NCBI GenBank assembly: GCA_013239625.1 | Contig: MU054693.1 | Span: 558,001 to 622,000, forward strand | Length of the DNA: 64,000 bases | Source: Lama guanicoe | Taxonomy: Eukaryota | Direction of reading: 5' to 3' | Shown here: one piece after another, positions 44,601-50,600 of the stretch | Numbering within the stretch: position 1 is the first letter of the stretch | How the letters are laid out: each line of letters begins with the position of its first letter | Notes under the pieces: model-generated | What the model was told of the DNA's origin: nothing | The model's database searches: none | The model's input: the letters and a program-made list of their open reading frames with translations, nothing else | Made by a program: the position numbers and the translations under genes

Positions 44601-47600
44601 TCTCATTCTGCAAACAAAGAAGTTAAAACTCAGACTGGTCACGTGACTTGCAAAGAGGCCAGACTGGACTCCAGGTGGTCTGTCTACCTCACGAGGCAAC
44701 GCCCTCCAATGCCACACTATCATGGGCTCCCAGGTAAGGCCCCTAGACCATGATGCTTACCCGAGGGGTGCAGGGCTGAGGGATAGAAGTCCACTGGGGT
44801 CCGGGTGGGCGTGATCCGGGGGTCCATGTAGGAAGGCATCATCATCCACCTGGGATCGAAGCCCAGCATCTGGGGGTGGTGCGGGTAGAAGGTGCGCTGT
44901 GGGTGCGAAGGCGGAGGAGGGTACACCGGCTGCCAGTGCTGCATCTTGTACAGCTGCTCCTGACCAGGGGGAGAGAGACCAGGTTGGACAGATGCTGGGG
45001 GGTGAAGAGGCCGCACACAAATGCACGTACACACACGCACACGTGCACAAGCACATGCACACAAACATGTGCACACGCACACACAGGCTCTTCAGCTTTC
45101 CCCCAGGTGGCACAGACAGCCCACCCAGAACAGATGGGCAAAGAGGGGAGGGAGGAGCAGCTGCTCCGAGGGGAGACCCCAGCATATTACAGCACTCAGG
45201 CTCTCTCCCAAGCCTCTCCCAAGCCGGATGGAAGCCACGCCCTGGGCTCCTCTGCCACACAAGAGAGACGGGGTTTCATTAAGACCCAATACTCACCTGG
45301 AACGGCGCCTGGCCAGAACGGCACCCAGGGACGCCCCCTTCCCCTCACCACACTGTCCCTTCAGTCCACTCTCCACACACAGACGCCCTGACCAGGTCAA
45401 AATCCTTCAGCTAACAGCCCGAATCCCACAGGGGTACACGTGACCGACAGGGCCCGCGGCTCCTGCCCGCCCCCTTGCCCCCGACCTGCCTCTCTAGCAA
45501 TGCCCCCACAATCGCCCTGGCTCTCCGCTCCATATTCCTGCCCGCCTGCCTGCTTTGGGCCCTCCGTCCCTCCATCCCCAAACCTGCTCACCCATACCCA
45601 TGCTTTAGGTTTCAGCCTAACGAGCACTTCCTCTGGGAAGTTGGGTTCACAACTCTGAACCCAAGGTCAGGCCCCTGTCCTCTGATCTCCTTTGTACCAT
45701 CAGCAACAGGTAACGCTGCTGCTGCCGGTTTCCCTCCCTAAACCACGAGACCGACGTGAGTTCTCCGCAGTATCTGCATCTCTACCACCAGACCTGGTGC
45801 AGAAAATGTTGGTGCCCAAAAGAACGAATGTAAAGCATCAACAGAGTATTAAAAATTAAGAACCTGGACCCAGTGAGGGGTCACCTCAGATCCTGTTCCA
45901 GGGCACCAGTGACCTCCAGGGCTGCCCTCACAAGTGCGTCCTGGACCACCATTCTGGCAGGACTCGTGGCAGACTCAGACAAGGGTGGGTCACTGACCTG
46001 CACACCCCTTCCTACCAGCCTGCTAGCCCAACTCCAGCCTGGGCCGGATTCCCTGGGCAGTTCGCCGGCACTCACAGCACCTCTTAGGAGCACTCAGCCC
46101 TCGATAAATAAGAGCTCCTGGCCCACACAGGAGGCTGCGGGCCTCTGCCCACGGCTCCTCCTCCTGTCTAGACCCCAAGTCCCTGGGGAATCCGAACAGA
46201 CAGTCTGTTTGCCAGGCTCCTCAGGCTACACTGGCACGTTCAGACTTCTTTCTATTCATGAGGAAGGATTTACCCGTCACTGCGCCCCAGAAGTTACCTA
46301 GAACAATTGTTCCTACTGTGTCTGGCTTGATTTACTCCAGACCTCCCCAGTCAATCAGGAATTCTTCATCAAGCCCATAAGTAACTAAAGCACAATGAAT
46401 GTAACTTCCTGTTGAGAGCACAGAATGTGGTCAGCTTCTGGAATGCTTCCTAGGGGCCCAAGGAAAGGAGGATCTGGGGTAAAGGTTTTAAAGGCAACTA
46501 AAGAGATTCTGGGAAAAGGTCTGAGATGTTGATGTGTTTCCTAGGGCACCCATATTTTAAAACACTTCGATTATTAACAATAATTTACTGCACACCTAGC
46601 TAAGCACGTCCATGCATGATCTGTTTCCCACTGAGACGCACTGTTCATTAGCAGTCAGCTCTTCCATGGGTCACTCCTCTAAGACAAATAATTATTATGG
46701 GTGGTTCCAGCTGGGCAAGATGACCAGGACTACAAGAGACCGCTATGATTACCATGACCCACACAGTCTTCCTCAGAGCAAAAAGTAGGTCCTTTCTAAG
46801 ATTTATGAATCACCAATAAAGAAGACCCTGATTGTACAGGCAAGTCAGTTCACAGGCATCATTAAACCCTGATCGTCACGCTGAGAGGCAGGTGTTTATT
46901 CCCGCTGCTTGACACTGACCTGTCCAAGGTCACACCTGACTAGGTAAGCTGCACCAGACTCCACAGCCATCCAACTCAAAACCTACAGCCCACCTCCCTG
47001 ACCCAAGGCTAACATGGCTCTTTCTGAAGCTCTCCCAGCAGCTCAGGCCTTCCCCAGTCCTTGGGAGGCTCCCAGGACAGGGCCATTGTCAGAGTGAGGA
47101 GTGGCCACGTTGTAGGGCTCTGAATGAAAAAACGACTTAGACACCACTAACTCACTCTTCCTTACCAGTATTAGACAACAGGGTCCCTAAACTACCAACG
47201 AGGGTTTTCATTCAAAGGAGAAATTACTTGGAAGAATTAATGGCCAGGGCTGACTTCCCAAGGCCCCAAGTTTTGAGGCAGAATTCCTGATATCCCTGCT
47301 GGTGACCAGGATACACACGAGCAGCCTTTTGCAGTGGGTTCTCCTCGAAGGCGGTGTGCGGAGGAGAGGGGACGCCTGCTCAGGGGCAGGTCTGCTGACA
47401 ACACCTAACATGCCCTGTTCACCTGCTGCTGCTGCTGCTGCTGCTGCTGCTGCTGCTGCTGCTGCTGCTGCTGCTGCTGCTGCTGCTGCTGCTGCTGCTG
47501 CTGCTGCTGGCGCTGTAATCGGGGAGGAAGGGACTTCTGGTACTTGCTGAATTCCTGTGCAGGGGATCCAGCCTCCCTGGCCCCCTCCTCACTGCTGCCG

Positions 47601-50600
47601 CTCTGAGCCACAGCTGGAGGAGCTGTGGGAGCTTCTTCCGAAAACATGTTGGGGGCTTCGTGGGCAGGGAACTCAGGGGAGCCTAAGGAACAAAGAAGAA
47701 GAGAAACTGCCAAGTGAGTCCACAAAACTTCCCAAGGCCCCAAGTTTTGAGGCAGAATTCCTGATATCCCTGCTGGTGACCAGGATACACACGAGCAGCC
47801 TTTTGCAGTGGGTTCTCCTCGAAGGCGGTGTGCGGAGGAGAGGGGACGCCTGCTCAGGGGCAGGTCTGCTGACAACACCTAACATGCCCTGTTCACCTGC
47901 TGCTGCTGCTGCTGCTGCTGCTGCTGCTGCTGCTGCTGCTGCTGCTGCTGCTGGCGCTGAAATCGGGGAGGAAGGGACTTCTGGTACTTGCTGAATTCCT
48001 GTGCAGGGGATCCAGCCTCCCTGGCCCCCTCCTCACTGCTGCCGCTCTGAGCCACAGCTGGAGGAGCTGTGGGAGCTTCTTCCGAAAACATGTTGGGGGC
48101 TTCGTGGGCAGGGAACTCAGGGGAGCCTAAGGAACAAAGAAGAAGAGAAACTGCCAAGTGAGTCCACAAAAGCTTGGCCGACCTAATGTTTAACAGCAAA
48201 TGCTTTTTCTCGGTGGCACTTACATTCCACGGCTAGACCCCCATCCTCAACCCCTGGTGCTGTGCTAACTGCTCTCCACACACAAGCTCACGGGGTCCCC
48301 AGCTCATCCTCACGTGAGAGACCAGCACACTAAGGGCCGAGAGATGGGGTGGGCCGCCTGAGGCCACACCATCAGCAGAGTGGGGACCTGGCTCCAGACG
48401 GGAGCGGCTCTGCTACAACAGACCCCAGGAAACAGGAGAGCAGCCATCAGCCACTAGAGTCCACACACCCATCCTCCGGCCACCAGAATCAGCACAGCCC
48501 ACGGCTGTGTGAGCCGGGGCAGCCCGCGAGCCTCTCCTGGCACATTCCTTCATCTGAGTGAGGAGAACAGGCGCGCCCGCCCCAGGGCTTCTGGGACAAT
48601 CGAGCAGAACAGTCCATGGGACGGACTGAAACAGCAGCTGGCGCGTAGTGAAAGCTCAACCCAATCTCCCATCACTGTTCTCTTTGGAATTCCCTTCTTT
48701 CTTGCCCCATCCCAGCTCTGCACTCTTCTTGTTTTTTTTTCAGCTTTGTTGAGGAGTAATTGACATTCGTGTTCTTAATTTTACTGCAGAAGGCAAACAA
48801 ATGTCGAGGCGAAGCCCCAGGGACCCAGCGTCCCGGGGGAATACTGACAGGCAGGGAGGGTACAGCGGGGCTTGGGGCACACACAACACCCAGGCCCTCC
48901 AGCGGACCAGCACCCACGGCCCACACTCACACCCCAGTCCACTGCCCGGACTCCCACTGCCCCACCTCGGCGAGTCCTGCATGGACAGGACATTTACAGA
49001 AGGACAATGATCATTTCTCTGAGTTCCTTGGCCTGAAGGGTGCTGATGACCATCAGACCAAGAGCAATTCCTCCATCTGAGAAGTTTCAGCACCTGAAAC
49101 TAACATCAGGTCCTTCTCTACTGAAGAAAGTTGGTTTCAGTTGATTTGAGAAAGTCACCAAGAACATATTCTTTAAGACTAACGTCCAAAGACACCCTCC
49201 ATCATGTAACAGTGTTCAACATCGCTTGTGCAGCCGAGCGATGCAGTCCTTCTAGAATAACATCAGGAGAAACGTATTCTTCCCTCCCTGTCATGAATAA
49301 GATCCTGTGCTCATGCTCAGGTCCTCGAGCTCCTGCATCTCTGGTTGAGTAGCAGCAGCAGTGATGGAAAACCTGGTGACACCACCGAATGCTCTCCGCA
49401 CCCGGGAACGTGCCAAGTGCTCACATCTCCTGCGGCCCCTCAGGATGCGGGGAGGCATGTGCTATCGCCACCCTGCGTCACAGGTGAGCAAACATGCTCC
49501 AGAGAGGTGCGGCTGAAGCCAGTGGGTTGAAGTAGTTGGAACAGGACGTGAACCCAGGCCCCTGACCCAGGCCCAAACTCTTAACGACTGGGGCTTCCCA
49601 GCATCACCCAGCTGTAAGACACAGGGAGACGCAGACAACCACCAGTGAAAACAGCCCAGGGCCTGCAGACTGTGGGACGAGGGCCCACCGCTTACCTTTG
49701 CGGACAGCAGGGCCATTCTCCTGTGCAGGCACTTTCTCGATGCCTGGAGAGCGGGGAACCTCCTTCTCCACCTGTTTCTGGGCCTCGCTAGCCTTCTGCG
49801 CCTGCTTACACTTCTGGTCCAGCTGCTTGAGTTTGGCAGCACAGGCGGCCAACCGCTCCTCCCGGGCCCGGCGCTCCTCCTCTTCCCGGCGCTTTCGGGC
49901 TCGTTCCACAGCCTCAGACATCTCTGACTGGATGAACTTCTGCCGCGGCGGCGGCTTGTCCTCTTTGTCTTCTACAGACTGCTGCCGGAACATGCTGCCT
50001 ATGGAGGACTTCTGCCAGGAGAAGAAAGCCTCAGCTGAAGCACATGTCACAAACCCGGAGAAGGGCCCACCCCCAGGGTGGGATCAGCGCTCCTTCCCAA
50101 GACCCTTGAGCACAGTCACATGCTGCCAGACCCGGGTTTTACTCCTGCTCTGCCCTTTCCTGTATGCGGAACGAGGTTTGGGCAAGCGGCCACGTTCTAT
50201 AACTTAGTTTCTCACTTGTAAACTGTGGACAATACAGGAAGCCCTTGGGACTGTGAGAAGGCAATAAACTGTTTGCAAAGCACTCAGTGCCAGGACGTAC
50301 ACCTAGGTCACTCCCGGGTAATGGACGCTCTGACCACTATTCATGGGCACAGCAGACTGAGCCTCCAGAGCTAAAGAACAGAGTGGGAAACCACACCCCC
50401 AGCATTTCTCAGCCATAAAACTGCTCTACACTTTCTCCCATGAAAATACATAAACTCGGGTCACGATGAGCCAGAAACTGAAATTCATACTCAGAAATAA
50501 GGTTTCAAGGTGATTCTTTATATATAAAAGCATCTCTAGAAACATCTCTTGAATATTTTACCCGCTTTTGAGACTCTCCCTGGTTGCCAGTTACTGGACA

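What the first reader, a model, noticed from the sequence alone, without database searches (positions are those of the whole stretch)
47253..48170. Tandem duplication of the whole PRRC2B polyQ exon, with Q19 and Q29 versions
Seen: two head-to-tail units (444 and 474 bp) each contain the full exon with intact acceptor and donor, separated by a 214-nt intron. They differ only by 10 CAG units and one TTT>TTA change (PPRFQR vs PPRLQR). The exon is asymmetric (phase 1 in, phase 0 out), so only one copy can be used in frame. Inference: if real, this is a very recent duplication that allows a mutually exclusive polyQ-length switch in a translation/RNA-binding regulator. The near-zero intronic divergence plus different repeat lengths is also the classic signature of two heterozygous alleles assembled in tandem, which I consider somewhat more likely.
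Basis: partly seen in the sequence, partly recalled or inferred. Interest (0 to 1): 0.8.

Follow-up and report, generated by a model that had tools for sequence, protein, structure and literature searches.

The report
Probable false duplication of PRRC2B exon
The two head-to-tail copies of a glutamine-repeat exon of the PRRC2B gene are really in this sequence, but they most likely come from an assembly error that placed two versions of one locus side by side, and no reads could be laid to prove it.

Summary
Window 47253-47726 (474 bp) and 47727-48170 (444 bp) are head-to-tail copies. They are identical except for (CTG)29 versus (CTG)19 and one T/A difference at 47516/47960. Each copy carries a complete minus-strand exon with the same acceptor and donor, and the exon copies lie 214 nt apart. 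The gene is PRRC2B: an orangutan PRRC2B fragment matches the upstream exon at 90% and then this exon at 80%, once only.

Either copy alone keeps the reading frame. Both together give a stop codon at 44844-44842. So a real homozygous duplication of two identical, equally spliceable exons should mostly produce out-of-frame mRNA.

All nine orthologue ORFs read have F at the variable codon and only Q3-Q9.

Two metagenome scans and an exact-protein look-up were blank or uninformative.

Unchecked first-stage notes list many other near-identical tandem exon duplications in this genome, said to be a camelid. That fits a systematic assembly artefact.

My odds are about 0.8 for a false duplication and 0.15-0.2 for a real recent one. 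Interest is low unless junction-spanning reads are found.

The parts
47253..47726 (-). Repeat unit 1 (474 bp). It is transcribed second on the minus strand and carries (CTG)29 and the T variant.
47727..48170 (-). Repeat unit 2 (444 bp). It is transcribed first on the minus strand and carries (CTG)19 and the A variant.
47897..48126 (-). Exon copy of 230 nt encoding [10 protein letters not shown]...[12 protein letters not shown] + Q19. It has the ancestral-type F codon.
   Evidence: It is 80% identical to residues 115-168 of an NCBI PRRC2B fragment.
47423..47682 (-). Exon copy of 260 nt encoding the same peptide, but with PPRLQR + Q29.
47683..47896 (-). The 214-nt spacer between the exon copies. 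It consists of 170 nt of native downstream intron joined to 44 nt of native upstream intron.
47726..47727 (.). Novel junction ...GTCCACAAA|ACTTCCCAAGG. This is the only sequence that exists solely if the duplication is real.
   Evidence: Two exact scans of the metagenome contigs, each with a pattern abutting a unit boundary, found no contig of this locus, so this is uninformative.
47516..47516 (.). The single substitution: T here versus A at 47960. On the minus strand this is TTA (Leu) versus TTT (Phe).
   Evidence: All 9 orthologue ORFs read have F.
47423..47509 (.). Pure (CTG)29, which is (CAG)29 on the coding strand and abuts the splice donor.
47897..47953 (.). Pure (CTG)19, which is (CAG)19 on the coding strand and abuts the splice donor.
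49696..50011 (-). Upstream PRRC2B exon ([11 protein letters not shown]...AVRK-G). Acceptor is ctcctggcag|AAG and donor is AAAG|gtaagc.
   Evidence: It is 90% identical to residues 9-114 of P0014.
44761..44959 (-). Downstream PRRC2B exon ([16 protein letters not shown]...). The stop codon met when both copies are included lies at 44844-44842.
   Evidence: The splice Qn|EQLYKMQ is seen in the orthologue P0011.

Best explanation
This is a false duplication made during genome assembly, not a feature of the animal's genome. The true locus holds one copy of the PRRC2B polyQ exon. That exon ends in a long, pure and therefore length-unstable CAG tract. Two sequence versions of the same ~0.45-kb stretch overlapped but differed by 30 nt inside the repeat. 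The two versions were either the two alleles of a heterozygous individual (Q19/Phe and Q29/Leu) or a contig end plus a long-read or gap-fill consensus carrying a repeat-length and base error. Because of the 30-nt mismatch the overlap was not recognised, and the two versions were joined end to end at 47726/47727. What is shown: the anatomy of the copies, the pattern of differences and the reading-frame consequences. What is inferred: that the junction is absent from the real DNA, and which assembly step produced it.
For: 1. The copies differ only in ways that two alleles or a consensus error would. They differ by 10 units of a pure trinucleotide repeat and by 1 substitution in 387 non-repeat bases, with no other change in 214 nt of intron.
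2. The length-variable repeat sits inside the duplicated unit. That is where an overlap alignment would fail.
3. The two exon copies have identical splice sites and 214 nt between them, which is enough for ordinary splicing. Nothing in the sequence would stop both from being included. Including both shifts the frame and gives a stop at 44844-44842, 84 nt before the end of the next exon, with many exons downstream. A real homozygous duplication would therefore mostly make nonsense mRNA of a conserved gene.
4. Orthologue sequences carry the exon once, between the same neighbouring exons. P0014 (named PRRC2B) shows the upstream exon followed by one copy. P0011 shows one copy followed by the downstream exon. 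All nine orthologues read have F. The Leu codon is found only in the Q29 copy.
5. Lead only, not checked here: first-stage notes on this same genome list many other near-identical tandem duplications of 0.2-2 kb that hit exons of conserved genes. These include LAMA5, SREBF1, CELSR1, PSD, F7, KCC4, RASA3 and a kinase exon. 82 notes fit 'tandem duplication' in 585 windows. That many real exon-disrupting duplications in under 2% of a genome is not plausible.
6. Background: false heterotype and homotype duplications, including falsely duplicated exons and errors from gap-filling, are well documented (PMC9516828). Published camelid references are hybrid assemblies. One had about 74,000 gaps filled from 11x error-prone long reads, many of them over-filled (PMC6618069; PMC7468183). 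Another is a meta-assembly (PMC6598621). Which assembly this window comes from is not known to me.
Against: No read-level or independent-contig evidence was obtained, so the absence of the junction from real DNA is not shown. There is no N gap at the junction, and false duplications on one scaffold are often separated by a gap (PMC9516828). Fourteen DNA runs hold 0.94-0.96 of the sampled 31-mers of 46300-49100. I cannot tell whether the missing 4-6% includes the junction words. Pure-CTG words alone could account for about 3% of the shortfall, so the junction words may be present. CAG/CTG tracts can themselves stall replication and provoke real local duplications (general knowledge). The supporting pattern across the genome rests on unchecked AI notes.
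Confidence: 0.8

Rival explanations
1. It is a real, very recent tandem duplication of 444-474 bp in this animal, either polymorphic or fixed in the species. It would have been made by replication slippage or template switching near the CAG tract. The repeat would since have changed length in one copy, and one point mutation would have arisen. It has no adaptive role. The doubly spliced mRNA is degraded, so the allele is hypomorphic or is tolerated when heterozygous.
For: The sequence as given is continuous, with no gap at the junction. A 1-bp microhomology at the breakpoints fits non-homologous or slippage mechanisms. Long pure CAG tracts mutate in length quickly, so a Q19/Q29 difference between young paralogues is possible. 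The k-mer share of 0.94-0.96 in runs of four labelled organisms does not exclude the junction words being present.
Against: Inclusion of both copies is the default expectation for identical exons 214 nt apart, and it gives a premature stop. Divergence is near zero. Orthologue transcripts carry only one copy. Many similar exon duplications are noted in the same assembly, which points to a technical cause (unchecked).
Confidence: 0.15
2. It is a real duplication used as a pair of mutually exclusive exons. mRNAs would take either the Q19/Phe copy or the Q29/Leu copy, giving PRRC2B isoforms that differ in polyQ length. Frame incompatibility plus nonsense-mediated decay would remove the doubly spliced form.
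For: Both copies have intact and identical splice signals. About 44 nt of native upstream intron, with a pyrimidine tract and a CTCAC branch-like motif, is retained before the second copy. The exon length is 2 mod 3, so each single inclusion is in frame and double inclusion is not. This is the arrangement seen in some known mutually exclusive exon pairs.
Against: Nothing favours one copy at a time. The intron is not too short, both copies have the same U2-type sites, and the sequences are identical, so competing RNA structures could not tell them apart. The copies have not diverged, so there is no sign of persistence under selection. No transcript evidence could be obtained. All arguments for an artefact apply first.
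Confidence: 0.04

Closest known systems
False heterotype or homotype duplications in genome assemblies (Kelley & Salzberg 2010; Ko et al. 2022, PMC9516828)
   Same: Two adjacent near-identical copies. Their only differences are of the kind seen between haplotypes or between a true sequence and a read-error consensus. They create a spurious extra exon in a gene model.
   Different: This one is much smaller (0.45 kb) than the typical haplotig-scale cases. It has no N gap between the copies. The diagnostic half depth, discordant pairs and single-copy k-mers could not be measured here.
Mutually exclusive exon pairs born by tandem exon duplication (general knowledge, e.g. Kondrashov & Koonin 2001; Letunic et al. 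2002)
   Same: Adjacent homologous exons of the same phase, whose joint inclusion breaks the reading frame.
   Different: Known pairs are old, diverged and conserved across species, and they have a mechanism that enforces exclusivity. Here the copies are identical apart from a repeat length and one base. They are not seen in other species' transcripts, and no transcript evidence is available.
Length-polymorphic coding CAG (polyglutamine) microsatellites
   Same: A pure uninterrupted (CAG)19 and (CAG)29 in a coding exon. If the two copies are alleles, this is a 10-unit heterozygote at a highly mutable repeat.
   Different: Allele status is inferred, not shown. No phenotype or population data are available.

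Membership tests
False duplication (assembly artefact) | Adjacent or nearby copies with near-100% identity | tested here: met
   386 of 387 non-repeat bases are identical and the copies are head to tail.
False duplication (assembly artefact) | About half (heterotype) or very low (homotype) read depth over each copy | not testable with these tools
False duplication (assembly artefact) | No reads or independent contigs spanning the copy-to-copy junction | tested here: inconclusive
   Two exact scans of JGI metagenome contigs, each with a pattern abutting a unit boundary, found no contig of the locus at all. The k-mer share of 0.94-0.96 cannot be broken down by position.
False duplication (assembly artefact) | Gap or depth-gap between the copies | tested here: not met
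   There is no N run at 47726/47727. The nearest N runs are at 21775-21914 and 61667-61838. A depth-gap could not be tested.
False duplication (assembly artefact) | Differences between copies are of allelic or error type | tested here: met
   The only differences are a microsatellite length difference and one substitution.
Mutually exclusive exon pair | Two adjacent homologous exons with intact splice sites and the same phase | tested here: met
Mutually exclusive exon pair | Joint inclusion is prevented or removed, by frame, steric hindrance, spliceosome type or RNA structure | tested here: inconclusive
   Only the frame argument holds, with a stop at 44844-44842. The 214-nt spacer is not too short, and both copies use the same GT-AG sites.
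Mutually exclusive exon pair | Both copies persist and diverge across related species | tested here: not met
   The copies are essentially identical. Orthologue sequences show one copy between the same neighbouring exons.
Mutually exclusive exon pair | Transcripts use one or the other copy | not testable with these tools
PRRC2B gene | Sequence match and exon order matching a protein named PRRC2B | tested here: met
   P0014 is 'PRRC2B isoform 8, partial [Pongo abelii]'. Its residues 9-114 match the upstream exon at 90%, and residues 115-168 match the polyQ exon at 80%.
PRRC2B gene | N-terminal BAT2_N domain (Pfam) | tested here: inconclusive
   Six exon-bearing ORF pieces gave no Pfam hit at E<=0.01. 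The N-terminal exons may lie outside the window or under N runs.

The most novel reading that the evidence does not exclude
The duplication is real in this camelid lineage. It gives PRRC2B two interchangeable copies of its polyQ exon (Q19/Phe and Q29/Leu). Frame incompatibility allows only one copy per mature mRNA. This would be a newborn mutually exclusive exon pair that switches polyglutamine length in a translation-associated RNA-binding protein.
Probability: 0.04. Interest if true: 0.65.

Novelty: not a real feature. Interest (0 to 1): 0.15.

Why it matters
If it is an artefact, the matter is practical. Gene models of PRRC2B on this assembly will carry a spurious extra exon, a frameshift or an arbitrary choice between Q19 and Q29. 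The locus should be flagged together with the many similar small tandem duplications noted in this genome.

Two things would remain of interest. One is a long, pure and probably length-polymorphic CAG tract (19-29 units, against 3-9 glutamines in the orthologues read) at the very end of a PRRC2B exon. The other is a possible Phe/Leu variant at a conserved position.

If the duplication were real, it would be a rare snapshot of exon duplication at time zero in a conserved gene.

Tried and rejected
Only coordinates from a local script and from the earlier one search are used.
- The look-up of encoding contigs was tried for the left-flank, junction and right-flank ORFs.
- The listing of cluster members gave an exact look-up of those ORFs plus controls. 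None is in the collection, controls included, so this is uninformative.
- Two exact scans of metagenome contigs, with patterns abutting the unit end and the unit start, both found nothing.
- A word search with the junction-spanning 157-aa ORF returned only other species, at no more than 86% identity. No contig of this species was found.
- Pfam on six exon pieces gave no hits.
- The protein atlas search on the 659-aa exon gave no useful hit, best score 0.77.
- I considered reading the 0.96 maximum k-mer share as proof that the junction words are absent. I rejected this because pure-CTG words could explain a similar shortfall.
- I considered a retrocopy or transposon origin for the second copy. 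I rejected it because the unit carries intron sequence on both sides and has no poly-A or target-site duplication.
Exons were searched separately, and joining was done only in a local script to count reading frames.
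Full report
**What is there**

Reading 46900-48600, the repeat finder and TRF confirm the observation. Two head-to-tail units lie at 47253-47726 (474 bp) and 47727-48170 (444 bp). A script split each unit at its CTG run. The 170-nt left parts are identical. The 217-nt right parts differ at one base, T at 47516 versus A at 47960. The CTG runs are 29 and 19 pure units. The junction reads ...GTCCACAAA|ACTTCCCAAGG..., with one base (A) of ambiguity. No other long direct repeat exists within the 64-kb window. 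TRF finds only these two CTG runs and one short 14-mer array.

**Gene and exon anatomy**

The coding strand is minus. Each unit holds a complete exon:
- 48126..47897 is 230 nt and encodes ...[15 protein letters not shown] + Q19.
- 47682..47423 is 260 nt and encodes ...PPRLQR + Q29.

Both copies have the same acceptor (ttctcttcttctttgttccttag|G) and the same donor (CAG|gtgaac). Both lengths are 2 mod 3, and the copies are 214 nt apart.

A word search with the junction-spanning ORF 47405-47878(-) gave 18 hits. All were from other species, at no more than 86% identity. One of them, P0014, is named by NCBI 'PRRC2B isoform 8, partial [Pongo abelii]'. Its residues 9-114 match the ORF piece 49607-50083(-) at 90%. 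Its residues 115-168 then match the polyQ exon at 80%. So in that protein the exon occurs once, directly after the upstream exon. Another hit, P0011, is a spliced form reading ...[11 protein letters not shown]|[15 protein letters not shown].... That fixes the downstream exon of the window at 44959..44761(-). The upstream exon is 50011..49696(-), with the sites ctcctggcag|AAG and AAAG|gtaagc. The gene is therefore PRRC2B. Pfam gave nothing on six exon pieces, and the protein atlas gave nothing useful on the 659-aa exon. Both results are unsurprising for a disordered protein.

**Consequences for the reading frame**

A local script counted frames. Either copy alone keeps the frame open through the downstream exon. 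Both copies together leave two extra bases. The second copy is then read as a poly-serine frame, and a stop codon follows at 44844-44842. That stop lies 84 nt before the end of the downstream exon, with many exons further on, including the 2-kb exon at 39386-37407. By the usual rule this mRNA is a target for nonsense-mediated decay. Skipping both copies also shifts the frame.

The two copies have identical splice signals. The second keeps 44 nt of native upstream intron with its pyrimidine tract. The 214-nt spacer is long enough for ordinary splicing. So joint inclusion is the default expectation, and a real homozygous duplication should mostly make nonsense mRNA of a conserved gene.

**Comparison with orthologues**

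All nine orthologue ORFs that I read carry F in PPRFQR. They have only 3-9 glutamines before the donor. The Leu codon is found only in the Q29 copy. The long pure CAG tracts are special to this genome's lineage.

**The decisive test could not be run**

The look-up of sequencing runs found 14 DNA runs, of four coded organisms and several studies, that hold 0.94-0.96 of the sampled 31-mers of 46300-49100. It also found four RNA or RNA-like runs that hold 0.32-0.33.

The other routes also failed:
- An exact look-up of boundary-crossing and junction-crossing ORFs found none in the collection, but the control ORFs were absent too.
- Two exact scans of metagenome contigs found no contig of this locus.

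The k-mer shares cannot be broken down by position. Junction words plus T-variant words make up 2.2% of positions, and pure-CTG words make up about 3%. A ceiling of 0.96 is therefore compatible with either reading.

**Leads from the scan's notebook (unchecked AI notes)**

A follow-up agent calls this genome a camelid (s1-861111). First-stage notes on the same genome list many other near-identical tandem duplications of 0.2-2 kb that hit exons of conserved genes. They name LAMA5 exons 45-50, SREBF1 exons 14-18, a CELSR1 GAIN exon, a PSD Sec7 exon, the F7 catalytic-histidine exon, KCC4 exon 3, the RASA3 acceptor and a kinase exon 12. They also name intronic cases in SKI and NHERF1. 82 notes fit 'tandem duplication' in 585 windows. 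I could not inspect those windows. If the notes are right, that many real exon-disrupting duplications in under 2% of a genome is not credible, and a systematic technical cause is far more likely.

**Background from papers**

Ko et al. (PMC9516828) describe false heterotype duplications (two haplotypes kept as paralogues) and homotype duplications (read errors, incorrect gap-filling), including falsely duplicated exons. They list half depth, gaps or depth-gaps, discordant pairs and single-copy k-mers as the diagnostic features.

Published camelid references are hybrid assemblies:
- The dromedary assembly had 74,277 gaps filled by PBJelly from 11x PacBio reads, many of them over-filled, and was later run through PBJelly twice more (PMC6618069; PMC7468183).
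- The alpaca reference is a meta-assembly of two assemblies with 5-8x long reads (PMC6598621).

I do not know which assembly the window comes from, so this is context only.

**Verdict**

The best explanation, at about 0.8, is a false duplication. One true exon ends in a long, unstable CAG tract. Two overlapping versions of it, either the two alleles or a contig end and a filler consensus, differed by 30 nt in the repeat and were joined end to end instead of merged. A real, recent and non-adaptive duplication keeps about 0.15. A working pair of mutually exclusive exons keeps about 0.04.

The points against the artefact reading are the absence of an N gap at the junction and the complete lack of read-level evidence. 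Reads across 47726/47727, or a simple PCR, would settle the question.

Noticed in passing
window 47423-47509 and 47897-47953: The coding CAG tract of this PRRC2B exon is pure and long, at 29 and 19 units. The nine orthologue ORFs from other species have only 3-9 glutamines at this place. If the two copies are alleles, the locus is a highly length-polymorphic polyQ microsatellite that abuts a splice donor. It was also noted by the scan as s1-860434.
   Followed up: partly
window 47516 vs 47960: There is a Phe (TTT) to Leu (TTA) difference at the F of the PPRFQR motif, which is invariant in the orthologues read. The Leu is found only in the Q29 copy. It may be a real missense allele or a consensus error.
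   Followed up: partly
window 46300-49100 (runs X15-X18): Four RNA or RNA-like runs from three studies each hold 0.32-0.33 of the sampled words. That is close to the share of the stretch taken up by the two units (918 of 2801 = 0.33) and about twice what the exon copies alone would give. It could mean a stable partly unspliced RNA around this exon.
   Followed up: no
window 18003-18161, 21775-21914, 61667-61838, 63763-63942: There are four N runs of odd lengths (159, 140, 172 and 180). Per the operators they are gaps or deliberate masks. I did not examine or fill them.
   Followed up: no
window 45032-45082: A short imperfect (CACACGCACACGTG)n array lies in the intron about 75-120 nt upstream of the acceptor of the exon that starts at 44959(-).
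   Followed up: no
window 47302-47994, both strands: The duplication creates long artificial ORFs across the junction: 157 aa on the minus strand and 145 aa on the plus strand, the latter with a poly-Ala run. Automatic gene callers could report these as genes.
   Followed up: partly
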